Assembly: GCA_002269645.1 (NCBI GenBank)
Contig: NIVC01003177.1
Span: 50,002 to 114,001 of the forward strand
Source of the DNA: Macrostomum lignano
Lineage: Eukaryota
Reading direction: 5' to 3'
Length of the DNA: 64,000 bases
The translations under genes and the position numbers were made by a program. The number at the start of each line of letters is the position of its first letter. The first letter of the stretch is position 1. The notes under the pieces were generated by a model that was not told where the DNA came from, ran no database searches, and saw only the letters and a program-made list of their open reading frames with translations. Of the stretch, positions 22,463-43,000 are shown piece after piece.

Positions 22463-25400
22463 TCACTGCTTGGCTTTTTCTTTCTGAAAATTCAAATAAA
22501 CAACTTGTGATTGATTTTTGCGTTACTATAAGCAAGAGATTCTGTTGATGTCGCTATGATGTGCCAGCGGCCCAGGCTCGATTCCAAATGCAGTCACATT
22601 AATTCGAGGCTAAATTGGAATCTCGGCTTGGCTCTACTCGTGAGACTAACGTCTTTGAGGGCACACCCCCAAGGCACAGTGAAGTGTACATGCCTTAACG
22701 ATAAATAAAGTTAGGGCCGCTGTACACTCCTGTGTGTGTGCCTGTCCGTATGACTGCGTACGTATCCGCGCGCTTGTGTGCCTGCTCAGGGGAGTCGGCG
22801 GAATGGGCAGTAATGCCTCTCGCTGTTTGTGTGACAATGCCACACACACAATGCACACAGCCCCTGCCTCTAAAAATATTTAACAGTTTAAGGTCAATTC
22901 GACTGGAAGCACCAATTGCGTCCAATCAATGTATATTCCTTGGGGCTCCCTGGGATAACGGGGATAAGAACAAGGATTTCGTATGAACTGAAGACTGCAG
23001 AATGGTTTTTACGGGAGTACGAGATTTGCTAGCAGGAAATCTGCTAGCCGAAGTTTGCTAGCCGAAATCTGCTAGCCGAAATCTGCTAGCCGAGGTTTGC
23101 CAGCCGAAGCTTGCTAGCAGGAATTTTGCTAGCGAGGATTTAGCTAGCCGAAATCTGCTAGCGGGAATTTGCTGACCGAACTTCTTGCAACCGGTGTCAA
23201 AAGATTGCTTGTTTTCTGGCAATAGTAATGCGTGGTTTTGGGTAAAAAATCCAGAAAAGTGGGTAAAAAATCCCAAATATTTTATAACTTAAAGCATCAG
23301 CATCATTTCAAGTGCTTGGAAAGTCAGTTTGTCATTGTGGGGAACAGAATACTCTCAAGTTGCAATCAGATAGCTCGTGGTTAGGACGGTAGTTGAATTG
23401 CTTACTAAACTGTCATGGCTAAACGTTAGCAGAGAAGGCTATAAAAAGTTATTCCAAAACACTGTAAATTTGCTATGTACATTGAGCCCTATCACCTGAT
23501 CCTTGGTCTGGGGGAGGGGAATGAGTTGGATGAGTCCGATGAGCGGCACAACAGAAAAAGCAGACAAACTTCACTTGCCTACAGTTTCTGTCCTGATTGA
23601 GGTACAAAGTTGAGACTTTATTTAGACAAAGAATGACTCAATGAAGAATTGTATCAAGTTTGAAGTCAATCGCTGTACGTGGAGCAAACTTATGGCAGCT
23701 GAAAGTTAGTTAATTTTAAACCCCTTTCGCATATCTGTCCAGTGGCCAGGAAGGAGAGAGAGGCGGAGGTTGGGGTGGCTGTCTCGCTGACGAAAGGCAG
23801 ACTAACTTTAAAAGTACACAGTGCCGTTCAGAATTTACTTCGAGACTCGAAACTTTACAGGATTGTGTCCAAATAGTTGAAAATTGATTGTGTCCAAGTT
23901 GAAGAGGATTGGTAAAAGTGGAGCGACGCTATAGAGGATTTAGTGAAATTCTTGCGAAACTGGACAAGCAAATTGTCTCTAGCTAATTACAACTTCCTGA
24001 GTTCGGCTAGCCCAATTGCTGCTTGCCGGTTTTGGTTGGATTCTCGCTAGCAAATCTCGGCTAGCAAAATCCTCGCTAGCAAAATTCCTGCTAGCAAGCT
24101 TCGGCTGGCAAACTTCGGCTAGCAGGTATCGGCTAGCAGATTTCGGCAAGCAAATTTCTCGCTAGCAAACTTCGACTAGCAGATTTCCTGCTAGCAAATT
24201 TCATAGACTTGGTTTTTACATCTCTTTCACTAACAATATAACCTCTTACCTCTTTAGAATTCCCAGACAGAGCGATAGCCAAGATCCCTGCGGCTGCAGT
24301 GGCAATTCCAACTCCAACTGCAGCTCCCAGGGCTCCTTTTTCCTGCCATGTCATTCCGTCCTCATCCGGGCTGGCCTTGGCTCGAATCCGATGCGTGCCG
24401 TTCCAGCAGTTGTCAGTGAACAGTCCATAGTCGCTGCCGCACGAGTCGAACAGGTCCTTCAGAGAGACGCCGGGATCGACCTTGCCAACCTGCCGGATCA
24501 GTTCCCAATCGCGAATGTCTCGTCGAATGATTTTAACGATTCGGCATTCGCCTTCGCGGTATCTGGCCCGATAGCTGATGTCGTCGTTCGGACCACCTGG
24601 AGCCGGAGGTGTTACAGCAATAAATTGTAACAATGAGCACCTAGAATTTGCCCTGGTAAGTGCCTCACTCGTATTACCAGCGTTCTATGCAGTTTTTTTG
24701 AAGGTCGAATCCCTACGAGATGACATTACAATTTTTTAATACCAAACTGTCAATATCTGATTGTCAAGGCTTCAGTTATACATCTACATACTTCTATATG
24801 CTTGTTGAGTTCATTTTTTAAACCTCTGGAAGTAGGAAAGGCGAAAGTTCAGTGTGCTCTCTAAATGCATTTTTGCAACAATGCACTGCATCGCTTAAAA
24901 ACTAATCATCAAAGAGCGTTAACGGTTCTCCATTTGTTGCGTTTTTTTCATACTACAGTAACAGTTTCCTCCATTTGAGTTGATGAACTTACAGAGCCCC
25001 TTTGAACCAAGCAAATGCAGAATTCGGCTGTCAAATTACTGTTCGTCGAACGTGGGGTTTACCACCAGATAATCCATATTAAACTTCTGATTATCTTTTA
25101 ACCTAAAGTTTGATCTAGGTAGTGCTCCATATTGATTAGTTAAATGAGTTACACTCTCATCGATGTATCAGGGCTACATTTTGTGAGACGGAAACACCAT
25201 ATACATAAAAATTAATATACAAGTTCATTATATGCTAGGTGTTTTGGGTCGCAAAATCCACCCGTACCGTAGATGTTAAGGATCAAGACCTAGGATTATA
25301 AAATTCAAAGTCTAAAAGGACTGTTACAGAATGAACCATTATTTTTTATTAGTTGATTTTACCTGCTTTTTGGCAACTCTGTGCAATTAGAATTGGTCAT

Positions 25401-25733
25401 GGCTCTAAATAAAGTTCAAAGAATAAAAGTTTAAACACGCATAAGGCCATAGCAAAATCCAAATCAAATCAAGTATCAAACCGTGCCACCATCCTATAAA
25501 TGCGACGGAAATAACGACGGATATGCTACCCGAAACTCACCCTTCTCAATCAGATAGAGCCCACCGTTCTTAGTAGTAACAACAGCCGCCTCGTGAACAA
25601 AGCCGTGAAGGGCACCGGACTTGTTGCCCGCAGAATACAATGGTCGCTTGTAGATGCCGACTTTAATGACCACTTGGTCTAGGTCGATGCCGCTGTGCTT
25701 TCTACGAAGCTGTCGTTTCCTCTTGTCCGCCAT
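22463..25733 (-). CDS. Permuted papain-fold (LRAT/PPPDE-like) tail-anchored protein, paralog 1 (exons 25733-25541, 24596-24250, 22483-22463)
   Basis: VIKVGIYKRPL...FVHEAAVVTTKNGGLYLIEK-GGPNDDI...DYGLFTDNCWNGTHRI...GALGAAVGVGIATAAAGILAIALSG...KEKAKQ*. GT-AG introns, phases 1 and 0, identical in all three paralogs. Confidence 0.85.
22557..22875 (+). mobile_element. tRNA-derived SINE, 5'-truncated, in paralog 1 intron 2
   Basis: B box GGCTCGATTCC, conserved body (GGGGAGTCGGCGGAATGGGCAGTAATGCCTCTCG) and ...CCCCTGCCTCTAAAAA tail. Confidence 0.88.
23013..24210. mobile_element. Mutator/foldback-type non-autonomous element with long inverted arrays of a ~15-bp GCTAGC-centred repeat
   Basis: 9-bp TSD GGTTTTTAC at 23004-23012 and 24211-24219. 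Array 23025-23170 is the reverse complement of 24045-24200. The paralog 2 site carries a single GGTTTTAC (empty site). Confidence 0.85.
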
Positions 25734-28700
25734 CGTCTATGCAAGATCAAATCTAATATTTTATGATTTTCCTTGTCTCTGAAGATTGAGGTCGGAGAGC
25801 TTGATATAATGATATGTTAGTCCATGCTTTCCTGTAGTTAATATCGTTTGGAAATTGGCACAGAACTGGTGACTGGTTTTCATGGTGCGCTTTACCAATT
25901 TCCTATTAATTCTCTAGTTGGCTTCTTTAACGGACAATAGTAAAGCGGTATTAAAAGTTGCTGACTATGTTAAAGCGTCGGTAGCTATAGCGGTAGGTAT
26001 ACAACTCAAACTGTTTCTCAAGCGTCAATCCAGCTATGTATACATCTAGCAGTTAAATAAAACTAACAAAGCAAAGAAACTGGGCCGTCAAAATGCTAAG
26101 CTAGTGAGCTACTGATACTAACAAGTAGACAATCTACACTTATTTCAAAAAGTTCAAAAATAAAAACACGGTAGATTAAATAGAAACTGTGAATTAGTAA
26201 TTTTTAACAACGCAAATTCAAGTAACAATTAATATAGTCACAAAATTTTACACTTGCGTACAGCTAATGTACGAGTAGATGATTCAGATAAAAGGGTTCA
26301 TGAAAAGCACTAATAGCTGTAGGCAGCTTTCAATAAGTACATCGCTTTCACTTGGGTGAGTGCATGCGGTACCCCAAAATTATTCCGAGCACACATCCGT
26401 TGAAAAATATAGATTGGCTTTAGAGGCATATTTACATGAGCGAGATGCTAATTTTGCTTAGTTGCGATCAGACTGTCACAACACTAATATGGCAATGGCA
26501 CAATAAAGTTATTTTTAAGGGAACTGTACTGGTCATAATTTCGGTATTGCGCTGCTAAAACAACCGAGTCTGAGTGAGCCTCTCTCACCACCGTTGCATC
26601 TGGGAATCTGTGCCAGATGTATAGTTGCCGCAGCCGCACTGCATTTACGCTTAGACTGATGTGGCTAACGTTCCATTTGGGTAACTGGTTGCGAAAAAAC
26701 ATCCAATGCTAGCTGCTATTACTGCTGCTCTGAACTAGTCCCTGACGATTCCCAATCTATCACGTAGATCTATCACGAGTGGCTTGCAAGACCCTTTGAT
26801 TGTCAACCAACTCCGGCCGCCACAATGTCCTGAAAAAGGACATTGGAGCTGAAAAATATGTTTTGGTCTACTGACGCTGGAACAACCGATAATCGACTTG
26901 TCGTGATCAACAATATTGATAAAGGCGTGATAAACAGCTAAACGTCGACACCACCGACATCCGTTTATCTCGGCTGGTGTACAGCACAAACTGTGAGTTG
27001 GCGACACTGACAAAGTACAAGTCATTGCAACCGTTTTTCCAGGTCAGCAGCGGCTCACTGAATGAGGTCGGCAAAGTTAAAACGCTACACCTGACAGACT
27101 TCATTTTTTATGGCTTACCTTTACCGCCGCGGGTAGCTGCATGCACTCCACCGGTGATTGCAGATGCATGCGGGTTGTGTTCAACATAGGCTAGCATGCA
27201 CTGAATGCATTTCATTTGTGCTTGCGCCCTGTTGCTGACCGTTCTAGAACTGTTGCTGGTAGCTCGAACCTCAAATGCGGTGGTTGTTTGGTCGGTTAAA
27301 CAAAAAACTGCTAGTTTAAAAAACTGAGGTTCAGTTCTTGTCTGCAGTGGCTGCTGTAATCTTTGAGAAGACCAAAAAATTCAGCAGAAAAGTGTCAATG
27401 AGCGCATTGTAGGTGAGGTTGCGCACGCCTGTCGCATCGTCCCAATACAACGAATGGATAACACGCAGCTGCTGGATCAACGGAGCGTCGAATGAATGCT
27501 GCGACAAGAGTGTGGAATGCCACAGTGCAATCATCGCCAGGGCATCCCCCGCAACGACACCCCTTTGGTTGATAGGGTTGCCGCCCTTGCTGCTGCTATA
27601 ACATTAGAGACTAGGGTTAACATGCGTATATATTGTCTGATTTATAAGGCATTTGGTTGATATTGACTAAAAAATAATAAAATTGTTGTTTCTTTGCTCA
27701 CCATGGAAGCGGTAAAGAGAGCGATGAGGCTTCGCCACAGTCCAGTTGTGCGTCGCTTCAACGACCAGCTGGCCGTTGTCATCGTCGACGCCGCCGTCGA
27801 ATCTTCGCCATCATAACCAACCGGCTGCTTTTGTATCTACGACACATGCTTGGCCGCAAAATGTTTCTTTGGTGCATCAGCGCGCATCACGGTGGTTTAG
27901 CTACATACATGTACATGACACTTTTTTGCGTAGGCGAAAGTTTCTATTTGTGGACGCTGTCACTGTTGCCAAGCCGTTGGTCACCGCAGCTAAATAATCA
28001 CACCTCGTATACTGGCTCGTTCACTCCGACGAACGAACTGACTGTTGATTTATCACTACATGGTCTGCCCCTTCCTTTCTTCATTTCTAAAACTCCCTTT
28101 TCCTAAAAAAGCAGTAGCTCTAGTCAGGTACGACAGTGTAACATATGCAGCCCTGACTGTAACAAATTGTGCCATAGACGTTAGAACAGATCGTAGTCCG
28201 ATTTCGGCTGCAACAGTGCAAATGCACCATTTGCTGTTTTACCAACACCTGAAGGCCCCCCCCCAAAGACGGCGGTGGGCCTTCTCTACGAATAAACCTG
28301 CAGACTTCCTTCTGTCTGGACACCAGTACCCATGTACATAATGCCCTCTGGCGGCGACGGCACTGCCAGCTGTACATTCAGGCTGCTGTGGTTGATGTTG
28401 CTGCTGCTGTTACTACAGCCATTCTTTAGCGGTGTTGGTGGTGTTGTTGCTGTGAAAGAGGGTGGCTGGTGGGCGCTCGCACACGCCACACAGATCGCCG
28501 CGCTAGGGACACTCTTAATTTCAATTTGGGTCCAGTTGCACATGGCCTTCCAATCAAATCGCAACAGTTATGGAGTACTGCGATGCGAAAAAATGCATGA
28601 AGGCTGGTTTTCCTCTGACTGATATTGTTGTCGCTAGTCAGAGGAGTGTACGGCTCCATAATGTGGGTTCTGGATAGCGGGAAACTCGTTATTACTGGCG

Positions 28701-30387
28701 CCTATTTTTTGTGTTATATTGAATTGTAGTATGCTTTTTTAGTTGTTTTAGTTGTTATTGTTGTTGTTGTTGGTATTGGTGTCTTCATTGTGATTCTGAT
28801 TGAAGAAAGTAGACAATGATTTTTTAAAATTTTTTGAGGGAGAAATATACAAACTTGCATAGATTGCGATGGGGACAGGAGGACAGGTCCTAACCCCACT
28901 CACTGATCGCCGATTGAGTCGCTCAATTCGACAGCTTCAGGCAGACACGAGCATCATTTTCAGCGCTCCGGGCTGCTTCAATTACGACGTATGCCAGTTG
29001 CAGCACAGACATTCCACGGCATGCGCGACAATTTTCTGGCTTTTCACCAATGGAGGCATCCGTTGCATCGTCGGAATGGCAGTAGTATTCTGGGGCGTCC
29101 TATAGGAAGCGGCCGCAGCGCCTTCTTGAACAGCCGCCTGTTAACGACGTGAACAGAAGGAGCGACGGATGCAATTTGATTTGGGGCATGAATGCACCAG
29201 CAACCAAAATATTTTCGTCATCAAAAGCAGCACCAATAAAAACAAAAATACTCTCACCTGACTGTGGCAAAAGAACAGTGCTTTGGCTGCTGAGCCTACT
29301 TGGCGAAACTGTTGGTGACTGTGGCTGCTGCTGGGCGCAGCAGCAGAAGCGACTTAATTCGGTCGCAGTGGCGGCAGTAGTCCTACAATCCCCGGCAGCG
29401 GCAGCGGCGGCGGAGCATATGGCTTTCTCCTGGTTAATCAACGAGCACTGAACCTAGCGGTTGAACGAGCATAGCGCATTATATGATTCATATATTTATG
29501 TATAGAAAGCGTGTATAAGCCTACTAATTACTATAGCGGGGATCGTATAGTCTATGGCTGCTGAAAAAAGTCTCAAAGAAGAGCTGTGCATCTTTAGTAA
29601 GACTATGCTACAGGCAGCGCCACTTCTGCCCAATAAATTGTCTATGGTCAAATCTATGCTGTACATCTTGTTATAAAGTTTAAAAGCTCTGTCGATATTT
29701 TCAGGGAACGTAAAGAACGAAAAGTACAATTATAAGGAACGCTGTACACCCTGTGTGAGAGTGTGTATGTCGAGTGCGTACTTTCGTACAATATTGGCAA
29801 CGAAAAGAAGCTACATGTACAAGAAGCAGTAATTTCAGATTGGAATTTTAAAATATATTAAATAAACCCATTCAATTCGCCAATGGCCTACACTGTTACC
29901 ATGAAATCTTTCAGGAGAATCAATCTACGAGCTTAGGTTAAATTTTTAGAGGATTTTTTTCTCAAATTTCCATGCGTCATTCCTAAATTATCCACTTTGA
30001 GTAACAAGTTTGAAAGGAATTTATTATTTTAAATCTGAAACAAATTTGATCTCTTTATAACCCTATGAAAGGTAAAAAATATTACAGGAGGTATCGATAG
30101 TCGATAGTTGTTTTTTATTTAAAATGCAAAATGTTGGTTTATGTCAGTCATGTCAGTTATTTGACATCAATAAAAAAAATTAAAGCACTGCGAACAGAGG
30201 ACACAATAATTTGAAGGTCTGAAGTACCATCGATAAATCATTAATGTATAGTCATGTCTCTATTAGAACCACATAGATTACACATGTATACATTTAAGAG
30301 AGAGTAGAGTCGCTCTACTAGACACAAGTTTGCAGCTAAGCGTGTTGATCCTCCGAGTATTTTGATTTGTTAAACCTTATTTGTTGA

Positions 30388-33059
30388 TCACTGCTTTGCC
30401 TTTTCCTTCTGAAAATTCAAATTTGTGGCTTGTGGTTATATTTTCGCGTTTACTACAAGCAAGAACCATACGACGGGAGTGCTGAGGTGTCAATAATCAA
30501 GACATAGTTCTGTTGTCTTTAGCATTATAAACCCGACAGATTCACAGGAGGCCAAGCTAGGAGGTCAAGGGCTTAAGCTGCGGACCCCTAAATAGTAGAA
30601 TGTCTTCTGCTATTACACTAGCAGGTTTGGCACTAGAAGACCTACTGCGAATTCCAGTCAGCACTGCCTCTAAAGCTCTCGATATATCTATATACTCGTA
30701 CCTCGAAAAGGCTTAAAATACATGTATGTCAATCGAACCGAAAAATCCAATTTTCCTGCTGATATGACAAAACAAGCAAAACTTGCTACTGGATTGAATA
30801 AACGATAAATAGTTGGTCGGGAGGAGTCAATTACAGTGGAGGTGTAGCCAAGTGGTCTGGCGCTGCGCTCTGATGTGCCAGCGGCCCAGGCTCGATTCCA
30901 AATACAAGACACATTAATTTAGGGCTGAACTGGAATCTCACCTAATTGGCTCTACTCGCACAGTTAATGCCCTTGAGGGCCAACCCCCAAGGCACAGTGA
31001 AGTTTACATGCCTAACTATAAATGTACGCATCTAAGCGCTTGTGTGCCTACTCAGGGGAATGGGCAGTAATGCTTCTCGCCGATTGTGTGACAATGAGAC
31101 AGAGTGCGCGAGGCTGCACACACAGCCTGCCTCTATAAATCTTGAAAAGTAACTTTGAGGTCAATTCGACTGGAAGCACCTGTTGTGTCCCACCGAGGTG
31201 CAATCCTTCGGGCACCCTGCGATAAAAGGAATAATAATGAACTAAATGAACTAATGTGAACTGAAGACTACTAATGGTTTTACATCCGTTGCCTCACTTC
31301 TTTAGAATTCCCAGACAGAGCAAAAGCCAAGATTCCTGCAGCTGCAACGGCAATTCCAACTCCAACTGCAGCTCGCAGGGCTCCTTTTTCCTGCCAGGTC
31401 ATGCCGTCCTCATCCGGGTTGCACTTGGCTCGAATCCGATGCGTGCCGTTCCAGCAGTTGTCAGTGGCCAGTCCGTATTCGCTGCCGCATGAGTCGAACA
31501 AGTCCTCCAGAGTGACGCAGGGATCGACCTTACCAACGGAACGGATCAGTTCCCAATCGCGAATGTCTTTTCGAGTTATTTTAACAATTCGGCATTCGCC
31601 TTCGCGGTATCTGGCCGGAAAGTTGATGTCGTCGTTCGGGCCACCTGGAGCCGGAGGTGTTACAGCAATAAATTTAACAGGGAGGACTAGAATTTCCCTT
31701 TTACCGTATCATGGCGTAACACCCTCATTCTATAAAAAAATTTTAAAGGTCGAATCCTGCGAGATGAGAATATTCCAGTTTTTTAATATCAAACTGTCAA
31801 TCATCTTTGCATGTTAATGCATGGTAATGCATCTTAATGCATGGTAATGCAACAATGCACTGTATCGTTTACAAACGAATCATCAAGGAGCGTTAATTGT
31901 GCTCCATTTTTGCGTTTTTAGAGTTCAGTAGCATTTTTCTTTAATTTTGAGTTGATGAACTTACAGAGCCCCTTTTGAACCCAGCCAATGCAGAATTCAA
32001 CTGTCAAATTACTGTTCGTCGAACGTGGGGTTGGTTTGCCTCCAGATAATCTAGTAAACTTCTGATTATCCTTTAACCTAAAGTTTAAGCTAGGTAGTGC
32101 TCCATATTGATTGGTTGAATGAGTTACACTCATCAATAATGTATCAGGGATACACCTTGTGGCACTGGAATGCAATACACAATAAATTTTTACGCTCGTA
32201 CAACGGACGTTGTAAGTGAATTATATGCACGGTGTTTTGGGTTGAAAAAGATATTGGTTCTTTAATAATTAAGGCCTAGGATTATAACATTCAAAGTCTA
32301 AAATGACTGTTAAAAAATGAACCATTATTTTTTATCAGTTAATTTTACCTACTCTTTGGCAGCGGGGGCCGTAGCCCAGCGGTAGCGCAGCTGCTCTGGT
32401 GTGCCGCAACCCAGGCTCGATTCCAAGTGCAGCCACATTAATTTGGGGCTGGATTGGAATCTTGGCTTGGTTCGCTTGTGCAATTAACGGCCTTGAGAGC
32501 CAACCCCCCAAGGCGCAGTGAAGTGTACATGCCTAACGATAATATAAAGTTAGGGCCGCTGTACACTCCTGTGTGAGTGTGTGCCTGCGTAACGTATCCG
32601 CGCGCTTGTATGCCTGCTCAGGGGAGTCGGCGGAATGGGCAGTAATGCCTCTCGCCGGTTGTGTGCCTATGTCGCTTAAAGTGCGCCGGGGTGCACACAA
32701 CCCCCTGCCTCTAAAAAAAAATACTCTTTGGCAACTCTGTGCAAATAGTTTGGTCATGGCCCTAAATATAAAAGTTCAAAGCAAAAGCTAAATCAAATCA
32801 AATATTAAACCATGCAACCATCCTATACATGCGACGGAAATGACGACGGATATGCTACCCGAAACTCACCCTTCTCAATCAGATAGAGCCCACTGTTCAC
32901 AGTGGTAGCAACAGCCGCCTCGTGATCTAAGCCGAGTAGGGCCCCGAACTGGCCCAGAGAATACAATGGTCGCTTGTAGATGCCCACTTTAATGACCACT
33001 TGGTCTAGGTCGATGCCGCTGTGCTTTCTACGAAGCTGTCGTTCCTTCTTTTCCGACAT
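30388..33059 (-). CDS. Permuted papain-fold (LRAT/PPPDE-like) tail-anchored protein, paralog 2 (exons 33059-32870, 31644-31298, 30408-30388)
   Basis: MSEKKERQLRRKHSGIDLDQVVIKVGIYKRPL...DHEAAVATT...YLIEK; EYGLATDNCWNGTHRI; hydrophobic C-terminus; KEKAKQ*. Exon 2 is 347 nt, as in paralogs 1 and 3. Confidence 0.85.
30838..31140 (+). mobile_element. tRNA-derived SINE, older diverged copy, in paralog 2 intron 2
   Basis: A box TAGCCAAGTGG, B box GGCTCGATTCC. Same downstream flank (GGTCAATTCGACTGGAAGCACC) as the SINE at 22557. Confidence 0.85.
32362..32721 (+). mobile_element. Full-length tRNA-derived SINE with 12-bp TSD
   Basis: A box TAGCCCAGCGG, B box GGCTCGATTCC, A-tail. TSD TACTCTTTGGCA at 32350-32361 and 32722-32733. 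The equivalent site in paralog 1 (~25360-25380) is empty. Confidence 0.92.
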
Positions 33060-33579
33060 GTTTATGAACGCTCGTAGGATCAAATCTAATATTTTACGTT
33101 TTGTTTGACTCTGAAGATCGAGATCTGTTAAATAGCTTGCGCGGTTGCCGAATTTTGTAGGCAAAAAACTGTCTATGGCACAGAGTGCTGCTTATTTACG
33201 TCTCACTCACCCAACCGCCTGACCATGTCCAAATAGTTCGCACGAAAGCCAGAGTACATGTAGCAAGAAAATAAAAGTTAGCGCCGAGGCCTGGAAGCAA
33301 GTTCTGAGCTTATGCTTCAGACCATAGACTAAAATAAACAGAAAAAATATATTTATACCCCGATTGGCCAACATTAACATTGTACATTTTAACCACAAAG
33401 AAATGTTGATTTGATGCATTTAAGAATGAATTTAAGAATTTAAGAATGAGTGGTTGTCTCTACTAATCTTTAATTTTTATCTGAAACATTTTCGAGTTTA
33501 ATATTTGCAACAACTGTGACGTTGACAGCGTCGGTTTTAAATCATAGTATAGTCTTGCTGAAGTCAAAGCTGTCTTTAG

Positions 33580-35730
33580 GTGGTAGAGAGGAGAGGGGAG
33601 AGAGACGGCAGAGAGAAGGAGAGAGGTGGCAGAGAGAAGGAGAGAGGCGGCAGGGAGAAGGCAAAAGAAGGAGAGGCGGCAGGAAGAAGGAGAGAGAAGG
33701 AGAGAGGTGGCAGAGAGGAGAGAGGCGGCAGAGAGAAGGAGAGAGAAGGAGAGAGGTGGCAGAGAGAAGGAGAGAGGTGGCAGAGAGAAGGAGAGAGGCG
33801 GCAGGGAGAAGGAGAGAGGTGGCAGAGAGAAGGAGAGAGGTGGCAGAGAGAAGGAGAGAGGTGGCAGAGAGAAGGAGAGAGGCGGCAGGGAGAAGGAGAG
33901 AGGCGGCAGGGAGAAGGATAGAGGCGGCAGGGAGAAGGAGAGAGGCGGCAGGGAGAAGGAAAAAGAAGAGGCGGCAGGGAGAAGGAAAAAGGAGAGGCGG
34001 CAGGGAGAAGGAAAAAGAAGGAGAGGCGGCAGGGAGAAGGAAAAAGAAGGAGAGAGGCGGCAGAGAGAAGGAGAGAGGCGGCAGGGAGAAGGAAAAAGAA
34101 GGAGAGGCGGCAGGGAGAAGGAAAAAGAAGGAGAGGCGGCAGGGAGAAGGAAAAAGAAGGAGAGGCGGCAGGGAGAAGGAAAAAGGAGAGGCGGCAGGGA
34201 GAAGGAAAAAGAAGGAGAGAGGCGGCAGAGAGAAGGAGAGAGGCGGCAGGGAGAAGGAAAAAGAATGAGAGGCGGCAGGGAGAAGGAAAAAGAAGGAGAG
34301 GCGGCAGGGAGAAGGAAAAAGAAGGAGAGAGGCGGCAGAGAGAAGGAGAGAGGCGGCAGAGAGAAGGAGAGAGGCGGCAGGGAGAAGGAAAAAGGAGAGG
34401 CGGCAGGGAGAAGGAAAAAGAAGGAGAGGCGGCAGGGAGAAGGAAAAAGAAGGAGAGGCGGCAGGGAGAAGGAAAAAGAAGGAGAGGCGGCAGGGAGAAG
34501 GAAAAAGAAGGAGAGAGGCGGCAGAGAGAAGGAGAGAGGCGGCAGAGAGAAGGAGAGAGGCGGCAGAGAGAAGGAAAAAGAAGGAGAGGCGGCAGGGAGA
34601 AGGAGAGAGGCGGCAGGGAGAAGGAAAAAGAAGGAGAGGCGGCACGGAGAAGGAAAAAGAAGGAGAGGCGGCAGGGAGAAGGAAAAAGAAGGAGAGGCGG
34701 CAGGGAGAAGGAAAAGGAGAGGCGGCAGGGAGAAGGAAAAAGAAGGAGAGGCGGCAGGGAGAAGGAAAAAGGAGAGGCGGCAGGGAGAAGGAAAAGGAGA
34801 GGCGGCAGGGAGAAGGAAAAGGAGAGGCGGCAGGGAGAAGGAAAAAGAAGAGGCGGCAGGGAGAAGGAAAAAGTAGAGGCGGCAGGGAGAAGGAAAAAGA
34901 AGGAGAGGCGGCAGGGAGAAGGAAAAAGAAGGAGAGAGGCGGCAGAGAGAAGGAGAGAGGCGGCAGCGAGAAGGAAAAAGAAGGAGAGGCGGCAGGGAGA
35001 AGGAAAAAGAAGGAGAGGCGGCAGGGAGAAGGAAAAAGAAGGAGGGAGGCGGCAGAGAGAAGGAGAGAGGCGGCAGAGAGAAGGAGAGAGGCGGCAGGGA
35101 GAAGGAAAAAGAAGGAGAGGCGGCAGGGAGAAGGAAAAAGAAGGAGAGGCGGCAGGGAGAAGGAAAAAGAAGGAGAGGCGGCAGGGAGAAGGAAAAAGGA
35201 GAGGCGGCAGAGAGAAGGAAAAAGAAGGAGAGGCGGCAGGGAGAAGGAAAAAGAATGAGAGACGGCAGGGAGAAGGAAAAAGAAGGAGAGGCGGCAGGGA
35301 GAAGGAAAAAGAAGGAGAGACGGCAGGGAGAAGGAAAAAGGAGAGGCGGCAGGGAGAAGGAAAAAGGAGAGGCGGCAGGGAAAGGAGAGAGAAGGAAAGA
35401 GGTGGCAGAGAGAAGGAGAGAGGCGGCAGGGAGAAGGAAAAAGAAGGAGAGGCGGCAGGGAGAAGGAAAAAGAAGGAGAGGCGGCAGGGAGAAGGAAAAA
35501 GAAGGAGAGGCGGCAGGGAGAAGGAAAAAGAAGGAGAGGCGGCAGGGAGAAGGAAAAAGGAGAGGCGGCAGGGAGAAGGAAAAAGAAGGAGAGGCGGCAG
35601 GGAGAAGGAAAAAGAAGGAGAGACGGCAGGGAGAAGGAAAAAGGAGAGGCGGCAGGGAGAAGGAAAAAGGAGAGGCGGCAGGGAAAGGAGAGAGAAGGAA
35701 AGAGGTGGCAGAGAGGAGAGAGAAGAAGAG
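33580..35730 (+). repeat. ~2.15 kb purine-rich minisatellite (GGCGGCAGGGAGAAGGAAAAAGAAGGAGA-type, 18-29 bp variant units)
   Basis: Directly visible. Source of the spurious 400-780 aa ORFs. Confidence 0.96.
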
Positions 35731-36907
35731 AAGCACTTGCCCTCCCGCAATTATAAAATACATACGAAGTCATATTTTTGCTAAGTTTCGAACTAAAAGT
35801 TTTGAGTATCACTTCCCCGCCTTTTGAAGCAGCCATCAGCAACAATGAGTTCGTACTAGGGTCACGCGTGGACACCAAGGACTTTGCTTCCGCTTGCTCT
35901 TTGCTCGGTTAAAACAAAACAGATTACGGGACTGAATTGTCCCCTGCTATGTAATGTGCCAAGTACATTTTTATTGTGCTCGGATAAAATCTTAAGGAAA
36001 CCATTGCTCACCAAGGTTTCATGCCTCCCTACCTCCCGCCAATCAGAACAGCCATGGGGTGGATGCTTTCTCAGATTTTAAAGGAAACTCAGATACACAC
36101 AATTACCCTCATATATCTCTCTCTCACTTTGAAGGTCTTTCGACTTGGATTCTGTAATCCTGTGTGAGAAGCTTTCCAACAACAAGTTGCATACGTACAT
36201 GTAGTTCTTTAATTTTTTAGTTCTTCTGTTAGAGAATTTTAGACCAATGGGATTCCCTATTTTGTATCAAAGAAAAGATCGCAATATGTTACGGATTGCA
36301 TTTTAATCAGATATTGATTAAACGCATTAAATCTGGCGATGCTTACCCATTCATTATTATGGGATCTTTCAGGAGAATCAATGGTACGAGCTGGGTAAAC
36401 TTTTTTAAAGAGCATTCTGTTTTTTATTCTTGATATTCAATGCGTCATTTCTCCAATATCTGCTTTGCGTAATATTTTTGAAATGAATCGTTTATTTAAA
36501 ATCAAAATCGGCTGACATCTTTGAAAATTGAAATATTGTGAAAGGTAAAATATTACAAGATCATTTTTGCAAACAAGGCAGTTAACGGCAGTCCATCGTT
36601 GGTTTTCTTGTCAGATAAGTAAGGATGCAATTTTTGAGCGATTAATAACCAATATAGCACGAGATGCGGTGCGTTGGCGCTTTTTTAGTATCAATAATAG
36701 AGAAAAAACAAAAAAAAACACAACGAACGGAGGATTTACTAATGTGAAATATGCATCGCATAGTCATGTCAGTATTAGATTACACATGCACTATACATAT
36801 AAGACAGAGGAGTCGCTCGATATCACTTCAGAGACCGAAACTGGCACAAGTTTGCAGCTAAGCGTGTTGATCCTCCGAGCAATTTGATCTGCTAAACCGC
36901 AAGCTGA

Positions 36908-38774
36908 TCACTGCTTGGCTTTTTCCTTCTGAAAATTCAAATTGGTAAGAGCGTATAGCTTGTGAAATATATTATTAGCAATAACTATATGCCAGGTGTC
37001 GCTTCATGAACCTGAAAAATTCAGCAAAACATTTTGCACGCTTTTTTAGTGTACTGTATCAATCTTCATCAGACTCCTATCTCAAGCTGACAACAAATAC
37101 CAGTAAGTTCCGTGGACGACGAGTAAATAAGCAGGAGATGCAGAAGAAATCGGTGAAAGAGATGATTTAGATTGAACTCTGAAGCCATATGGACAAGTGT
37201 TTGATGAAGACAGAGCCCGCCTTCGTGACGCACACGACGACAACGGGCAGAATTTATTTTTTTTATTAGAGGCAGAGGGGTTGTGTGCACCCTGGCGCAC
37301 TTTAAGCGACTTAGGCACACAACCGGCGAGAGGCATTACTGCCCATTCCGCCGACTCCCCTGAGCAGGCACACAAGCGCGCGGATACGTACGCAGGCACA
37401 CACTCACACAGGAGTGTACAGCGGCCCTAACTTTATATTATCGTTAGGCATGTACACTTCACTGCGCCTTGGGGGGGGGGGGTTGGCCCTCAAGGCCGTT
37501 AAGAACGGGCAGGAGGATTATGTCCATCTGGTGCGACTAAAGAACATCAAAAGACCCCACATCAAAAGCGAGCCAAAGGTGGAAGAATTAAAAGTAAGAA
37601 AGAAAGAAACACCGTTGGCGTCCCATCCAATCATTGGTATCATTAAAATTCTAGGAGATAAATGAATGATGATGGGATTTCATGTGACCTCAAGGCTCTG
37701 TAATGGGTTCTACATCCTGTCCCCTGTGAAGTCTCACCTCTTTAGAATTCCCAGACAGAGCAAAAGCCAAGATCCCTACGGCTGCGGCAATTCCAACTCC
37801 AACTCCAACTCCTACGGCTCCTTTTTCCTGCCAGGTCATGCCGTCCTCATCCGGGTTGCACTTGGCTCGAATCCGATGCGTACCGTTCCAGCAGTTATCA
37901 GTGGCCAGTCCGTAGTCGCTGCCGCACGAGTCGAACAAGTCCTCCAGAGTGATGCCGGAATCGACCTTACCAACTGGCCGGATTAGTTTCCAATCGCGAA
38001 TGTCTCGTCGAGTGATTTCTACAATTCGGCATTCGCCTTCTCGGTATCTGGCGGGAAAGTTGATGTCGTCGTTGGGCGAGACACCTGGAGCCGGAGATGT
38101 TACAGCAATAAATTTAGCAAGGAGGGAGCACTAGAATCTACAGTGGTATCTGGACGTAACACTCGTATTCTATAATATAATTATGAAGACTGAAATTGAC
38201 GAAATCATTTTTTGTAACCAGACACTACATCGTTTGAAAGCTGTTCATCAAAAGACGTTAATTGTGCTCCATTTCGTCATTTTGTATTTTAAGCTAGGTA
38301 GTGATCCATATTGATTGCTTAAATGAGTTAAAGCAAGTAAATCAAGTACTGTATCAGTGCTACATTTAGTGGGTCAAAAAGGCCATAATGCACGTAAATT
38401 AATATATTAGTGTGTCATATTAATGGTCTTTTGGGTTAGGTCAAACATTTGAACAACCATAAGCCCAAACTGGTTTATTCAAAGCTAAACCAAATAAAGT
38501 TTCTAATCTTATTGATGCGACTAAAATATCTGAGAACTCGTTTCTAAACTACGAGCGTAAGCTATGATACCTGAAACTCACCCTTCTCAATGAGATAGAG
38601 TCCACCGTTCTCAGTAGTAGCAACAGCTGCTTCGTGAACAAAGCCGAGAACGGCACCAGACTTGCTGCCCACAGAATACAATGGTCGCTTGTAAATGTCT
38701 ACTTTAATGACCACTTGGTCTAGATCGATGCCGCAGTGCTTTCGATGAAGCTCTCGTTTCTTCTTGTCCGCCAT
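36908..38774 (-). CDS. Permuted papain-fold (LRAT/PPPDE-like) tail-anchored protein, paralog 3 (exons 38774-38582, 38084-37738, 36928-36908)
   Basis: MADKKKRELHRKHCGIDLDQVVIKVDIYKRPL...FVHEAAVATTENGGLYLIEK; DYGLATDNCWNGTHRI; GAVGVGVGVGIAAAVGILAFALSG; KEKAKQ*. A 3-nt insertion and a 3-nt deletion keep exon 2 at 347 nt. Confidence 0.85.
37254..37505 (-). mobile_element. tRNA-derived SINE, 5'-truncated, in paralog 3 intron 2
   Basis: Reverse complement of the SINE body and tail; opposite orientation to the intron-2 SINE of paralogs 1 and 2. Confidence 0.88.
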
Positions 38775-40022
38775 CGGATATGTAATATCGAGTTCAATAT
38801 GTTATGGTTCTTTTTCTCTGAAGATTGAAAGCGGAAAGCTGTGTTAGTTTGTGCTTTACTAGTCAATATCGCCTGGAAATTGCATGCTTTTAGTTCCCTT
38901 TTACACAGTTGAACCACCCCCCATGGAAAGAGGGGTCGGCGCTGTTAGATAGTGTACGTACACTAGCACTAAAAATAGTACATATGCACATAAAGCTACA
39001 TGCATATTTAGATCGAGAAAAGCAGACAAGGAGACGAAAGTCAAGAAATTTCATTGGAGTACATTGTTCGCGTACATTTACGCTCGTACATACAGACAGA
39101 GACAGTCAGAAGTAAGAAAGAGAGCAAGCAATATGTTCGTGCTTCGTAAAGCACATAAACCTAACCTACTCGCCTATTTCAGATATGCTAGCACAGTAAA
39201 TGTTATAATCTGACGTGTTTGAATCAACATAGACATTCGTTTGATAATAGAAAAAAAAGATAAGAGACTCGCGCCTAGTATTAAGTTAAATTAATGGCTT
39301 TATTAAAAACGTGTTTACATGTATTTCAAAACGTTTTGCAATACTCTTCAGAAATTGGACCACAGATACGATTAAAAGACCCTTAGTTACTGATACTACT
39401 TTCGATTGGGCGACTGTCAGGAGTTTTTTGGATTATTTTGTTCGTGTCAAGAAATTAATTTTAGATGTAGTCGTACGAGTATAAGCACCAGGGCGCCAGC
39501 ACCAGGGGCGCCATATGCATATAGAGGACCGCACTAAAGCCCTGAGAATTTTCAAAGCAAAAATGCTTTTCAAAGAACGTTACCCACCATTAAAATAATT
39601 CTAAAAATATTTTACGCTTTTGAGTTATAAAATCAAACTTCTGTAGGAAACATTCACAATATACTAAATCTCTAAGATCTTATTATACTCATATTCATGC
39701 ATCTAGAATAGTTCATCTGTTGCGCAAGTTGTTATACAAGATGACAGTAAATAGGTTAACGGGTGCAAGTTCAGTAAGAAAACTTCATAATATGCGGCGA
39801 GAGTAGTGCAGTATGATATTATGCAATCGGTTTTAAGGTTACACGGTGCAGAAGGCAGGTATTCCCGTTGTGTATGAAAATCGGCCACTCATTTACGAGC
39901 GTAACAGCAATAGCGACGAAAAATCATTTTAAGAGTATTACATAACTTTGCTGAGAGTTTAATGTCTATATATTTAGAAATGTCAAACTTTAAATAATCT
40001 GAGAGCTCTCAGTCAACCAGCG

Positions 40023-40870
40023 ATGGCAGCCAAACCGACAAGAGAGTTCAGACGAAAACACTCCAGTGTGGACCTGCAGCAGCAGATTGTGATCAGTCTT
40101 GACCTGTACAACCGGCCTCTGAACGGCAAGGGAGGCAAGTCGGTCACCTTATTCGGGTTTGTTCACGAAGCAGCAGGCTCTAAAGGGCGTTAATTGCGGG
40201 AGCAGAGCCAAGGTGAGATTCTAATTTAGCCCCAAAAATTAATGTGACTGCACTTGGAATCGAGACTGGATCGCTGGCACATAAGGATTGCAGCGCTAGA
40301 CCAGTGAGCTACGGCTCCCCTCTTGGCTTTGGTGTTGGGCTGTTCTGCACTTTTAGATGTAGGCTGTATAGTTTTCCACTTCGAGAGTAACACTGAAGCA
40401 TCCAAGTGAGATTATTAAAATACAACGCGCACTTTGCAGGCGTCAGCAAAGACTTTGACATCGACTATCCAGTTAGGTATCGCGAAGGCGAATGTCGCAT
40501 TGTAGAAATTTCCAGACGCGACACTCACGACTGGATGCATATCAGGAAAGCGAAGTGTTCAACCGAGCGTCACACTGGAGGACCTGTTCGACTACTGCGG
40601 CAGCGACTACAATCTGCTGGCGGACAACTGTTGGAACGTTGGCGTCCACAGGATGCGGACCACGTCCTGCCGTGGCGATCGGTTTGTTGACCATGGCCCT
40701 GTCGGACAGTTCTAAGGAGAAGACGGTAAGGCTAAATGATCACTTTCTTTAAGTTAAGCAAAGTTGATCTCGGTTAGCGCGTAGCTGAAGCTGTTAGGTG
40801 GTAAAATTAAATATTGTACACCTACATGTTATACATCTTTCAGAGAAAGAAGAAAAGCACACTCAACTGA
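40023..40870 (+). pseudogene. Inverted, more divergent fourth paralog of the LRAT/PPPDE-like family, disrupted
   Basis: MAAKPTREFRRKHSSVDLQQQIVISLDLYNRPL...FGFVHEAA is cut by a SINE head, then TAA. Exon 2 (40440-40725) reads RYREGECRIV...[frameshift]VTLEDLFDYCGSDYNLLADNCWN...[frameshift]AVAIGLLTMALSDSSKEKT. Exon 3 (40844-40870) reads RKKKSTLN*. Confidence 0.82.
40176..40320 (-). mobile_element. SINE 5' (tRNA-like) half inserted in the pseudogene exon 1
   Basis: Reverse complement of the SINE head (plus-strand CTTGGAATCGAGAC...GCTACGGCTCCCC). Confidence 0.8.
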
Positions 40871-41907: not shown

Positions 41908-43000
41908 TCATTTATTACCGCGCAAGCCCAGCTGTGGCCCAAGCACCGCCAGTGATCTTTTAGCCGGAGCTAGGCTGTCAGTAACCCCGGCGTGACCTCG
42001 TTTCCTAGCCATCCTGTTGTCTCCGTCAGCAGCTGGGTTCTCAGCTGACGGCTTGCGCACCACCAGAGCCCGCTCTTTGGCCTCCTCGCTGTGACTGTAC
42101 GGACAGCGGTGCCCCCGATCGCATCGGCCAGATAGGAAGCGTCTGCACAGCGGTATCCGTTTTAAACCGCTGCTTCTGCTAGCGGAATTAGTTGCCGCTT
42201 CTATCGGGGTCACGTGATGCGCTAATACGGCTAACTTCTTACGCTCGGCTTTATGGTACTCGGTTACAAATACGGATTCGTGCTCAGCTGATGCGGCCGC
42301 AAAACTTGGCAATAGATTCGAGGAACTACTGGCTTGTTGCTGCTGCCGATTGCTGTTTTGCTGCTTCAAGTCTGTACTATTCAATTCACTGTCTTCGAGT
42401 TCGACGTCTATTTCAACGAATCCGTCGCTTTGATTGTCGTCTGTGTCCTCGTCGCTGGGGCTGTTGCTATGGTCAGAGGCAGACTGAATCAGACCAAAAC
42501 TGTTGCTGCCGCTAATAAGTTTGCTGCTTCGTTTCTCTTCCGTTGATTTGCTTTCCTCATCTTCAGCTGTTGCAGTGTCTGAATTTTGCTCTGGGGAGGA
42601 ATGTTGAACATATTTAATAACTTAGACTACTTGATAATCACGAGTAAATTTATCCAATGTACATTTAGCTACCAAAGTAAAAGGACGATACTTTTTTCAA
42701 TATTTCTTTTTTCCATTTTACCTGTGTTATCTGCAACAACTCTGGGGCGCTTTTATAATGACTCTGAGGGCCGTAGAGTCGAAATTTTAAATTTCACACC
42801 CAGAACATAAAATTTAGAAAATATGAAAAGCAAAAAACACATCTCGCTTACCATCATCATATTTAGCATCATCAAAGTCTCCATCACTGTCGCCTGAAAT
42901 TTCGCTCGATTTTTGTTTTGTACTTTTATAATTTTTCACTGCCTCAGCAGCCTCGGGAGCATCGCCTTCGCTCTCGCTGCCGCTACTATAAGCTACTAGC
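41908..43000 (-). CDS. Acidic/Ser-rich protein with one CCCH zinc finger (exons ~43000-42852 and 42590-41908); start not found
   Basis: SSGSESEGDAPEAAE...DGDFDDAKYDD, phase-1 intron (G|GTAAGC...CCCCAG|AG), then EQNSDTATAEDEESK...LCRRFLSGRCDRGHRCPYSHS (C-x7-C-x5-C-x3-H)...GNK*. Confidence 0.72.

What the first reader, a model, noticed from the sequence alone, without database searches (positions are those of the whole stretch)
22463..40870. Tandem family of uncharacterised tail-anchored permuted papain-fold enzymes (3 intact + 1 pseudogene)
Seen: ~185-aa proteins with His in [FL]-[VD]-H-E-A-A-V upstream of a Y-x-L-x-x-D-N-C motif, then a ~20-aa hydrophobic helix and a basic KEKAKQ tail in its own 21-nt exon; no signal peptide. 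Splice sites, phases and exon-2 length are conserved while introns diverge. Established: His-before-Cys with YxLxxxNC marks circularly permuted NlpC/P60 enzymes (LRAT/PLAAT acyltransferase-phospholipases, PPPDE/DeSI isopeptidases); PLAATs carry C-terminal membrane anchors. Inference: a locally expanding, membrane-bound lipid-modifying or isopeptidase family, possibly for defence or stress.
Basis: partly seen in the sequence, partly recalled or inferred. Interest (0 to 1): 0.72.

Follow-up and report, generated by a model that had tools for sequence, protein, structure and literature searches.

The report
Tail-anchored LRAT-like thiol enzyme gene cluster
A flatworm (Macrostomum lignano) locus holds three intact tandem genes and one dead copy. 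They encode small membrane-anchored proteins that look like very distant relatives of the PLAAT/LRAT lipid-modifying cysteine enzymes; this is a real but modestly novel family, and its activity is untested.

Summary
Three 3-exon genes on the minus strand (A 22463-25733, B 30388-33059, C 36908-38774) encode 185-186-aa proteins. All have GT-AG introns, a 347-nt exon 2 and a 21-nt last exon encoding KEKAKQ. A fourth copy (D, 40023-40870, plus strand) is a pseudogene.

The window is Macrostomum lignano. GenBank already lists near-identical 184-186-aa "hypothetical proteins" from an RNA-seq-guided annotation. dN/dS among the copies is 0.27-0.48.

No Pfam or PDB sequence hit exists. An exhaustive HMMER scan of 1.84 billion proteins found only 9 clusters. 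His47, Asn127-Cys128 and Tyr121 are nearly invariant, and position 63 is always polar (E/H/D/Q).

Profile-profile alignment to PLAAT proteins lines up His/His/Cys with His47/Glu63/Cys128 (P 4e-4; 0 of 200 shuffles reach the score). The AF2 model puts Cys128 at a helix N-terminus.

Foldseek gives no significant PDB hit. Its best sub-threshold hits are picornavirus 2A H-box/NC proteins. The only significant hits are two uncharacterised mimivirus proteins.

The C-terminal anchor plus basic tail mirrors PLAAT3.

Verdict: a divergent, Pfam-less family of the permuted NlpC/P60 superfamily, closest to LRAT/PLAAT. The substrate is unknown, and nothing supports a defence or stress role.

The parts
22463..25733 (-). 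Gene A (186 aa). Exons are 25733-25541, 24596-24250 and 22483-22463. His47 codon is 25595-25593, Glu63 is 25547-25545 and Cys128 is 24408-24406. The anchor helix (residues 156-174) is 24324-24268.
   Evidence: It is 98% identical to GenBank M. lignano protein P0001.
30388..33059 (-). Gene B (185 aa). Exons are 33059-32870, 31644-31298 and 30408-30388. It carries LDHEAAV instead of FVHEAAV.
   Evidence: The closest GenBank protein is P0003 (exon pieces 98% and 93% identical).
36908..38774 (-). Gene C (186 aa). Exons are 38774-38582, 38084-37738 and 36928-36908.
   Evidence: It differs from GenBank protein P0002 at one residue.
40023..40870 (+). Pseudogene D. The exon-1 remnant is 40023-40174 and the dispersed-repeat copy is 40176-40330. 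The exon-2 remnant is about 40439-40725, with a frameshift and a deletion. The terminal-exon remnant is 40844-40870 (RKKKSTLN plus stop).
   Evidence: The same lesions occur in contig NIVC01000029.1, where it is not annotated as a gene.
22463..22483 (-). The 21-nt terminal coding exon of gene A (KEKAKQ plus stop). The equivalents are 30388-30408 in B and 36908-36928 in C.
   Evidence: Pattern search. The same C-terminus is present in the RNA-seq-guided GenBank proteins P0001-P0004.

Best explanation
Genes A, B and C encode tail-anchored enzymes of a divergent, unnamed family in the circularly permuted NlpC/P60 (papain-like) superfamily. The closest known family is LRAT/PLAAT (H-box/NC).

Shown:
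- A globular domain of about 140 residues with no signal peptide is followed by one C-terminal hydrophobic helix and a 12-residue basic tail.
- His47 lies on a beta-strand. A polar residue (Glu63) lies on the next strand of the hairpin. Tyr121-x5-Asn127-Cys128 is conserved, and Cys128 sits at the N-terminus of a helix in the model.

Inferred:
- The protein is inserted post-translationally into an organelle membrane, with the domain facing the cytosol.
- Cys128 is activated by His47, which is oriented by Glu63. It attacks an acyl ester or amide at the membrane surface to form a thioester acyl-enzyme.
- The acyl group then passes to water (phospholipase A1/2-like) or to an amine or hydroxyl acceptor (acyltransferase-like), as in PLAAT enzymes.

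The substrate is unknown.
For: Gene models and constraint:
- Near-identical annotated proteins come from an RNA-seq-guided annotation (PMC5730564, read).
- dN/dS is 0.27-0.48.

Residue conservation:
- Across 14 homologs, H47, Y121, N127 and C128 are invariant.
- Across 17 homologs, His is kept in 16, Cys in 15 and Asn in 17. The third position is always E, H, D or Q.

Profile-profile comparison with 14 PLAAT proteins:
- With the 14-sequence family alignment the score is 25.2 and P is 0.006. H47 aligns with H23, E63 with H35 and C128 with C113. None of 300 column shuffles reach it (maximum 22.2).
- With the 17-sequence family alignment the score is 31.7, P is 3.9e-4 and probability is 36% over 91 columns that exclude the anchor. 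None of 200 shuffles reach it (maximum 19.8).
- Single-sequence yardsticks give PLAAT3 24.9, DeSI-1 22.4 and E. coli YaeF 11.2.

Structure:
- The AF2 model built on 14 sequences has a core pLDDT of about 88-95.
- Its element order is b1, b2 (His47), b3 (Glu63), b4, a short helix, b5, a2, a3 (starting at Cys128).
- From my own knowledge of the PLAAT3 structures, this is the PLAAT3 order.
- The top Foldseek hits, although sub-threshold, are Aichivirus 2A (PDB), a pithovirus 'lecithin retinol acyltransferase', and kobuvirus and parechovirus polyproteins (BFVD).
- Those 2A proteins are H-box/NC homologs of PLAAT3 (bioRxiv 10.1101/2024.04.06.588386, abstract listed).

Other support:
- UniRef calls paralog P0007 an 'LRAT domain-containing protein'.
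- The anchor has a Kyte-Doolittle mean of 2.2-2.4 with a 12-residue SGNSKEKEKAKQ tail. PLAAT3 has 2.08 with a 10-residue MFSRNKRQKQ tail.
- The PLAAT C-terminal helix is required for membrane targeting and function (PMC10760033).
Against: - No member reaches any Pfam model. LRAT PF04970 does not appear at all, and one member touches PPPDE PF05903 at E 0.08.
- HMM-to-sequence search of the PDB finds nothing.
- Foldseek finds no PLAAT, LRAT or DeSI structure among its top 50 PDB matches, and nothing at E <= 0.001.
- The hhalign probability is only 6-36%.
- The PLAAT profile was built from close vertebrate sequences. The PPPDE control had only two near-identical sequences, so the LRAT-versus-PPPDE contrast is weak.
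- The His-Cys distance in the model could not be measured.
- Two relatives on contig L001 have lost the Cys, so catalysis is not universal in the family.
- No expression, localisation or activity data were found.
Confidence: 0.55

Rival explanations
1. PPPDE/DeSI-like (C97) enzyme. The same permuted His-Cys domain would act on protein-linked modifications at a membrane. Candidate reactions are ubiquitin or SUMO isopeptide cleavage, or S-depalmitoylation as reported for Cln5, rather than action on phospholipids.
For: - The Y-x-L-x3-N-C motif is shared with PPPDE. DeSI-1 aligns to the family profile over this motif with score 22.4 and P 0.009.
- One family member gives a weak Pfam Peptidase_C97 hit at E 0.08.
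- PPPDE-like Cln5 is a cysteine-based S-depalmitoylase (PMC9012467, abstract listed).
Against: - The DeSI-1 alignment covers only 25-26 columns around the NC motif and never reaches the His strand. With the 17-sequence profile its score falls to 18.5 (P 0.049), within the range of the shuffles.
- DeSI structures 2WP7 and 3EBQ are not among the top 50 Foldseek PDB hits.
- PPPDE places a non-polar residue at the third triad position (PMC3142127). This family always has a polar residue there.
- The architecture of a C-terminal anchor plus basic tail is that of PLAATs.
- Caveat: the PPPDE control profile was thin, with only two sequences.
Confidence: 0.2
2. Not an enzyme. The conserved His and Cys would be structural or binding residues of a small membrane-tethered adaptor, or of a different fold that only mimics the H...NC pattern.
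For: - There are no significant hits to any characterised enzyme by Pfam, PDB sequence search or Foldseek PDB.
- Two tandem relatives on L001 lack the Cys, and one also lacks the His, yet keep intact ORFs.
- Picornavirus 2A H-box/NC proteins, the best structural neighbours, are reported as structurally plastic (title of bioRxiv 10.1101/2024.04.06.588386).
Against: - His, Asn-Cys, Tyr and a polar third residue are the most conserved positions. This holds across cytosolic anchored forms and forms with signal peptides, which is hard to explain by disulfides or packing.
- The collinear alignment of all three triad positions with PLAAT beats every shuffle.
- Cys128 sits at a helix N-terminus in the model.
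Confidence: 0.15
3. A domain exchanged with giant viruses. The family would be a eukaryote-Mimiviridae shared module acquired horizontally in either direction. Its role in the animal would relate to virus-host membrane conflict rather than housekeeping lipid metabolism.
For: - The only significant structural matches are Tupanvirus A0A6N1NL70 (E 9.5e-6, 130 columns, 20% identity) and Moumouvirus A0A2P1EKP2 (E 3.8e-5, 136 columns, 21% identity).
- The family is extremely patchy: 9 clusters among 1.84 billion representatives.
Against: - The scan of IMG/VR viral contigs found no relative.
- The animal genes and the related metagenome contigs have introns, and the M. lignano genes lie among ordinary host genes.
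- The viral sequences could not be retrieved, so homology rests on two model-to-model matches.
- This reading concerns origin and does not exclude the enzymatic mechanism.
Confidence: 0.1

Closest known systems
PLAAT1-5 / HRASLS phospholipase A-acyltransferases and LRAT (Pfam PF04970, PROSITE LRAT domain)
   Same: - The order of catalytic residues is permuted: His on a strand, a polar residue on the next strand, then Tyr-x5/6-Asn-Cys at a helix start.
- Size is similar, at about 160-190 aa.
- There is no signal peptide.
- A single C-terminal hydrophobic helix is followed by a short K/R/Q-rich tail.
- The profile alignment is collinear.
   Different: - It does not hit PF04970.
- The motif is NCW/NC[IMH] rather than NCEHF.
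- The third residue is Glu in the M. lignano copies, whereas PLAAT3 has His.
- The His-to-polar spacing is 16 residues, not 12.
- It lacks the N-terminal GDLIE strand motif.
- There is no significant Foldseek match to PLAAT structures.
Picornavirus 2A H-box/NC proteins (kobuvirus, parechovirus)
   Same: They are the best, although sub-threshold, structural neighbours in both the PDB and BFVD. They have the same H...NC motif logic and are known PLAAT3 homologs (bioRxiv 10.1101/2024.04.06.588386).
   Different: They are viral polyprotein segments without a tail anchor. Foldseek E-values are only 0.28-0.6 and TM-scores are at most 0.4.
PPPDE / DeSI (Pfam PF05903, MEROPS C97)
   Same: A permuted His-Cys domain with a Y-x-L-x3-N-C motif. 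There is a weak motif-level profile match.
   Different: The alignment is limited to the NC motif. PPPDE lacks a polar third residue and a tail anchor. There is no Pfam or Foldseek match.
YaeF/YiiX/poxvirus G6R (MEROPS C92, Pfam PF05708)
   Same: A permuted Cys-His-Glu triad, with Glu about 15 residues after the His (PMC3142127). Here the His-to-Glu spacing is 16 residues.
   Different: There is no profile signal with E. coli YaeF (score 11.2, P 0.64) and no Pfam hit. The Tyr position relative to the Cys differs.
Uncharacterised mimivirus proteins A0A6N1NL70 (Tupanvirus) and A0A2P1EKP2 (Moumouvirus)
   Same: These are the only significant structural matches: 130-136 aligned columns, rmsd 4.0-4.8 and 20-21% identity.
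   Different: They are much longer proteins (535 and 366 aa). One is named an F-box/FNIP-repeat protein.

Membership tests
LRAT/PLAAT (PF04970) | The sequence matches the family HMM above the curated threshold. | tested here: not met
   No PF04970 hit for genes A-C, nor for any of 14 family members at E <= 10.
LRAT/PLAAT (PF04970) | A permuted catalytic triad: His on a strand, a polar residue on the next strand, and Cys in an N-C motif at a helix N-terminus, preceded by a conserved Tyr. | tested here: met
   - H47, Y121, N127 and C128 are invariant in 14 sequences.
- Position 63 is E, H, D or Q in 17 of 17 sequences.
- Cys128 starts helix 128-139 in the model.
- hhalign pairs these residues with PLAAT3 H23, H35 and C113.
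LRAT/PLAAT (PF04970) | Statistically supported homology to family members. | tested here: inconclusive
   - hhalign P is 0.006 and 3.9e-4, but probability is only 6% and 36%.
- None of 300 and none of 200 column shuffles reach the score.
- UniRef names paralog P0007 an 'LRAT domain-containing protein'.
LRAT/PLAAT (PF04970) | Three-dimensional similarity to solved PLAAT or LRAT structures, with His and Cys adjacent. | tested here: inconclusive
   - Foldseek against the PDB gives nothing at E <= 0.001. PLAAT entries are not in the top 50, and the top hit is the H-box/NC protein Aichivirus 2A at E 0.28.
- BFVD rank 3 is a pithovirus 'LRAT' at E 0.16.
LRAT/PLAAT (PF04970) | A C-terminal membrane anchor (PLAAT1-5 subgroup). 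| tested here: met
   A 19-residue window with Kyte-Doolittle mean 2.2-2.4 ends 12-13 residues before the C-terminus. PLAAT3 has 2.08 and 10 residues.
LRAT/PLAAT (PF04970) | Thioester acyl-enzyme and phospholipase or acyltransferase activity. | not testable with these tools
   This requires biochemistry.
PPPDE/DeSI (PF05903) | The sequence matches the family HMM above the curated threshold. | tested here: not met
   One of 14 members hits at E 0.08, and none of A-C does.
PPPDE/DeSI (PF05903) | Profile homology extending over both the His strand and the Cys helix. | tested here: not met
   The alignment to DeSI-1 covers only 25-26 columns at the NC motif. Scores are 22.4 and 18.5. The control profile was thin.
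YaeF/YiiX C92 (PF05708) | Sequence or profile similarity to a family member. | tested here: not met
   hhalign against E. coli YaeF gives score 11.2 and P 0.64. There is no Pfam hit.
Tail-anchored membrane proteins (topological class) | No signal peptide, and a single transmembrane segment within about 30 residues of the C-terminus. | tested here: met
   AF2 predicts helix 148-175, at low confidence. Membrane insertion itself was not tested.

The most novel reading that the evidence does not exclude
These genes represent a previously undefined family-level branch of permuted papain-fold thiol enzymes. It would be shared patchily between marine or aquatic invertebrates and Mimiviridae giant viruses. 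It would exist in tail-anchored forms, forms with signal peptides and Cys-less (pseudoenzyme) forms. Its substrate or role would differ from known PLAAT/LRAT and DeSI enzymes, for example organelle-membrane remodelling in virus-host conflict.
Probability: 0.2. Interest if true: 0.55.

Novelty: new variant of a known kind. Interest (0 to 1): 0.35.

Why it matters
If the assignment holds, M. lignano carries a Pfam-invisible, lineage-restricted set of PLAAT-like membrane-anchored thiol enzymes. M. lignano is a regeneration and stem-cell model in which transgenesis is available.

PLAATs rupture organelle membranes, make N-acyl-phosphatidylethanolamines and serve as picornavirus host factors. A distant invertebrate branch with structural matches in giant viruses would widen the known reach of this enzyme type. 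It would also justify a new family model for annotating currently 'hypothetical' proteins.

The value is incremental. The fold class and architecture are known, and no phenotype or activity is attached yet.

Tried and rejected
- **Pfam and PDB sequence searches.** Pfam scans of A-C and of 14 homologs gave no meaningful family. phmmer and hmmsearch against PDB sequences gave only chance hits: ISWI, TM1112 and a TetR regulator.
- **First AF2 run.** With 4 near-identical sequences it gave pLDDT 44.5 and was unusable.
- **Second word-index search.** Run with the family alignment, it added nothing new.
- **Viral contigs.** The IMG/VR scan found no relatives, after a first attempt failed for lack of conserved stretches.
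- **Expression data.** No paper or held supplement mentions the four BOX15_Mlig gene ids or links Macrostomum to LRAT.
- **tRNA-derived SINE idea.** For the dispersed repeat, ARAGORN finds no tRNA, so this was left open.
- **YaeF/C92 as closest family.** I considered it because of the Glu third residue and rejected it on hhalign.
- **Conserved intron position.** In relatives L011-L016 an intron follows the LVHK codon, one base from the M. lignano position. L017 splices elsewhere and L008-L010 have no intron there, so this is not a firm shared character.

Full report
**1. What is in the sequence**

Reading the minus strand of 22400-25900 shows a three-exon gene. A pattern search for the KEKAKQ-stop micro-exon finds exactly three copies, at 22463-22483, 30388-30408 and 36908-36928. 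All three are preceded by TTGAATTTTCAG.

| Gene | Exon 1 | Exon 2 | Exon 3 | Protein |
|---|---|---|---|---|
| A | 25733-25541 | 24596-24250 | 22483-22463 | 186 aa |
| B | 33059-32870 | 31644-31298 | 30408-30388 | 185 aa |
| C | 38774-38582 | 38084-37738 | 36928-36908 | 186 aa |

All introns are GT..AG. Intron 1 interrupts the Gly codon after LIEK in phase 1. Exon 2 is 347 nt in each gene.

Introns differ in length: 944/1225/497 nt for intron 1 and 1766/889/809 nt for intron 2. They align only in patches, mostly at about 69-79%. Nei-Gojobori estimates give dS 0.19-0.28 and dN/dS 0.27-0.48, so the copies are under purifying selection and are not very recent duplicates.

A six-frame motif scan and tblastn with all family members find only one further locus, D at 40023-40870 on the plus strand. 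D is dead for three reasons:
- Exon-1 homology ends at 40174, where a dispersed repeat starts at 40176. This creates HEAAGSKGR followed by a stop.
- Exon 2 is frameshifted.
- The segment between DNCWN and the hydrophobic helix is partly deleted and shifted.

**2. Source and prior annotation**

The word-index protein search returns only four proteins, all Macrostomum lignano "hypothetical proteins" of 184-186 aa. They are 81-98% identical to gene A and all end in KEKAKQ.

The window is collinear with two contigs of assembly GCA_002269645.1:
- NIVC01000029.1, at about 92-95% identity. It holds the B-like and C-like genes.
- NIVC01001413.1, at mostly 90-97% identity. It holds the A-like gene and a second gene.

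That assembly is known to be redundant because of the hidden polyploidy of the DV1 line. Its annotation derives from a genome-guided RNA-seq transcriptome (PMC5730564). The annotated proteins therefore give indirect RNA support for both splice junctions, including the 21-nt exon.

The D locus is 99.7% identical in NIVC01000029.1, carries the same lesions and is not annotated as a gene there. So the array and its dead member predate the divergence of these two genome copies. "Locally expanding" is not what the data show.

**3. The wider family**

An exhaustive HMMER scan of 1.84 billion representative proteins with the M. lignano profile found only 9 clusters at E <= 0.001:
- The query group itself.
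- Three more divergent M. lignano paralog groups (P0005, P0006, P0007).
- Five unnamed clusters from ENA and Logan assemblies.

UniRef names P0007 an "LRAT domain-containing protein". A metagenome scan added 11 short eukaryotic contigs. Several have introns. In L011-L016 an intron follows the LVHK codon, one base from the M. lignano intron-1 position.

Three relatives (L008, L009, P0012) have N-terminal signal peptides and no C-terminal anchor. Contig L001 carries three tandem intronless paralogs. Two have lost the Cys, and one of those has also lost the His.

Residue conservation:
- In the 14-sequence alignment the invariant positions include H47, Y121, N127 and C128.
- In the 17-sequence alignment His is kept in 16, Cys in 15 and Asn in 17.
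- The residue 16 positions after the His is always polar: E in most M. lignano copies, D in P0007, and H or Q elsewhere.

**4. Is it a permuted papain-fold enzyme?**

Direct searches fail. There is no Pfam family for A-C or for any of the 14 members, apart from one Peptidase_C97 touch at E 0.08. There is no PDB sequence match either.

*Profile-profile comparison.* The human PLAAT3 sequence I supplied was verified as 100% identical to 4FA0 over residues 1-134. I used it to collect PLAAT proteins and aligned 14 of them.
- hhalign of the 14-sequence family profile against this PLAAT profile gives score 25.2 and P 0.006 over 88 columns. H47 pairs with H23, position 63 with H35, and Y121-N-C128 with Y106-N-C113. 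None of 300 column-shuffled PLAAT profiles reach that score (mean 13.0, sd 2.5, maximum 22.2).
- With the 17-sequence family alignment the score rises to 31.7 (P 3.9e-4, probability 36%, 91 columns that do not include the anchor). None of 200 shuffles exceed 19.8.
- Single-sequence yardsticks against the 14-sequence family profile:

| Yardstick | Score | P |
|---|---|---|
| PLAAT3 | 24.9 | 0.0033 |
| DeSI-1 (verified against 3EBQ) | 22.4 | 0.0089 |
| E. coli YaeF, C92 family | 11.2 | 0.64 |

- The DeSI-1 and single-PLAAT3 alignments cover only the Y-x-L-x3-N-C motif.

So the superfamily signal is real but weak. LRAT/PLAAT is favoured over PPPDE only modestly, and C92 is not supported.

*Structure.* AF2 with four close sequences failed (pLDDT 44.5). 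With the 14-sequence alignment it gave mean pLDDT 71.6, with core blocks at 88-95.

The element order is strand 21-30, strand 47-54 (starting at His47), strand 59-64 (holding Glu63), strands 77-79 and 82-86, a short helix 89-92, strand 96-101, helix 110-117, and helix 128-139 starting at Cys128. A long low-confidence C-terminal helix follows. A nucleophilic Cys at a helix N-terminus, packed against a sheet carrying the His, is the papain-like arrangement. From my own knowledge of the PLAAT3 structures, the element order is also that of PLAAT3. This was not tested here by superposition.

Foldseek results:
- Against the PDB there is no hit at E <= 0.001. The best are Aichivirus 2A (E 0.28; six chain entries among the top 25) and a Josephin-type clippase.
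- Against BFVD there are two significant hits, both to uncharacterised mimivirus proteins: Tupanvirus A0A6N1NL70 (E 9.5e-6) and Moumouvirus A0A2P1EKP2 (E 3.8e-5).
- Next in BFVD come a pithovirus "lecithin retinol acyltransferase" (E 0.16) and kobuvirus and parechovirus polyproteins (E 0.3-0.6).

The picornavirus 2A proteins are H-box/NC homologs of PLAAT3 (bioRxiv 10.1101/2024.04.06.588386). Their repeated appearance at the top of two independent libraries is consistent with a remote LRAT-like fold, but it is not proof. I had no access to model coordinates.

**5. Architecture**

The N-termini are strongly charged and hydrophilic. The only hydrophobic segment is a Gly/Ala/Val/Ile-rich stretch (19-residue Kyte-Doolittle mean 2.2-2.4) that ends 12-13 residues before the C-terminus, followed by SGNSKEKEKAKQ. 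PLAAT3 has a comparable segment (2.08) followed by MFSRNKRQKQ.

The more distant M. lignano paralogs P0006 and P0007 also end in a hydrophobic segment, while the non-Macrostomum relatives do not. In PLAATs the C-terminal helix is needed for translocation to organelle membranes and for function (PMC10760033).

**6. Most likely mechanism**

*Shown:* conserved genes under constraint, a tail-anchor architecture, and a conserved His, polar residue and Tyr...Asn-Cys constellation in permuted order.

*Inferred:* the domain faces the cytosol on an organelle membrane. Cys128, activated by His47 and Glu63, forms a thioester with an acyl group taken from a membrane lipid. The acyl group is then released to water or to an acceptor, as in PLAAT/LRAT enzymes (the general mechanism of permuted NlpC/P60 enzymes is in PMC3142127 and PMC10318531).

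I put this at 0.55. The rivals are:
- A PPPDE-like isopeptidase or depalmitoylase (0.2).
- A non-catalytic or differently folded protein (0.15).
- A reading centred on exchange with giant viruses, which concerns origin more than mechanism (0.1).

No evidence was found for or against a defence or stress role. No expression data could be located.

**7. Novelty and score**

The genes are already in GenBank as hypothetical proteins, and one distant paralog already carries an automatic LRAT label. What is new is modest: a coherent, Pfam-less sequence family in a known superfamily, with anchored, signal-peptide-bearing and Cys-less members and two structural matches in Mimiviridae. I rate it a new variant of a known kind, with interest 0.35.

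Noticed in passing
window 23018-24205 (inside intron 2 of gene A): A foldback-like element. Its inverted arms are about 120-190 nt, are built of 14-nt GCTAGC-containing subrepeats and are 92% complementary, with about 870 nt between them. It accounts for the extra length of A's intron 2.
   Followed up: partly
window 22559-22662, 30835-30981, 32364-32501, 40176-40330, 62838-62895: A dispersed repeat of about 100-150 nt, 77-91% alike between copies. Copies sit in introns of A and B, and one truncates exon 1 of pseudogene D. ARAGORN finds no tRNA in it.
   Followed up: partly
window 33597-35731 and 989-2163: A 2.1-kb purine-rich minisatellite (58-nt period, about 32 copies) lies between genes B and C. 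It produces long spurious ORFs on both strands. A CT-rich 19-nt array lies near the window start.
   Followed up: no
window 4498-7359 (+) and 58782-61781 (+): Broken retroelement ORF pieces. One set has gag-protease, reverse-transcriptase and integrase Pfam hits (LTR type). The other has endonuclease and reverse-transcriptase hits (LINE type). Only separate ORF pieces were examined.
   Followed up: no
window 13042-15361 (-) and 41908-42384 (-): Neighbouring host genes: exons of a rhodopsin-family GPCR (7tm_1, E 2e-10 and 7e-13) and a CCCH zinc-finger ORF.
   Followed up: no
window 45189-45770, 49273-50032, 52214-52700, 43458-43677: Highly regular tandem arrays with periods of 95, 82, 42 and 80 nt, at 95-98% matches, in the AT-rich right part of the window.
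   Followed up: no
L001 1362-2042, 3120-4097, 5428-5898: An ENA metagenome contig of unknown eukaryotic origin carries three tandem intronless paralogs of the family. One keeps His and Asn-Cys. One has Asn-Phe in place of Asn-Cys. One has lost both the His and the Cys and has a long low-complexity N-terminal extension.
   Followed up: partly
L008 933-1448, L009 421-918, and protein P0012: These relatives of the family have N-terminal signal peptides and no C-terminal anchor. The same domain is therefore apparently used outside the cell in some organisms.
   Followed up: no
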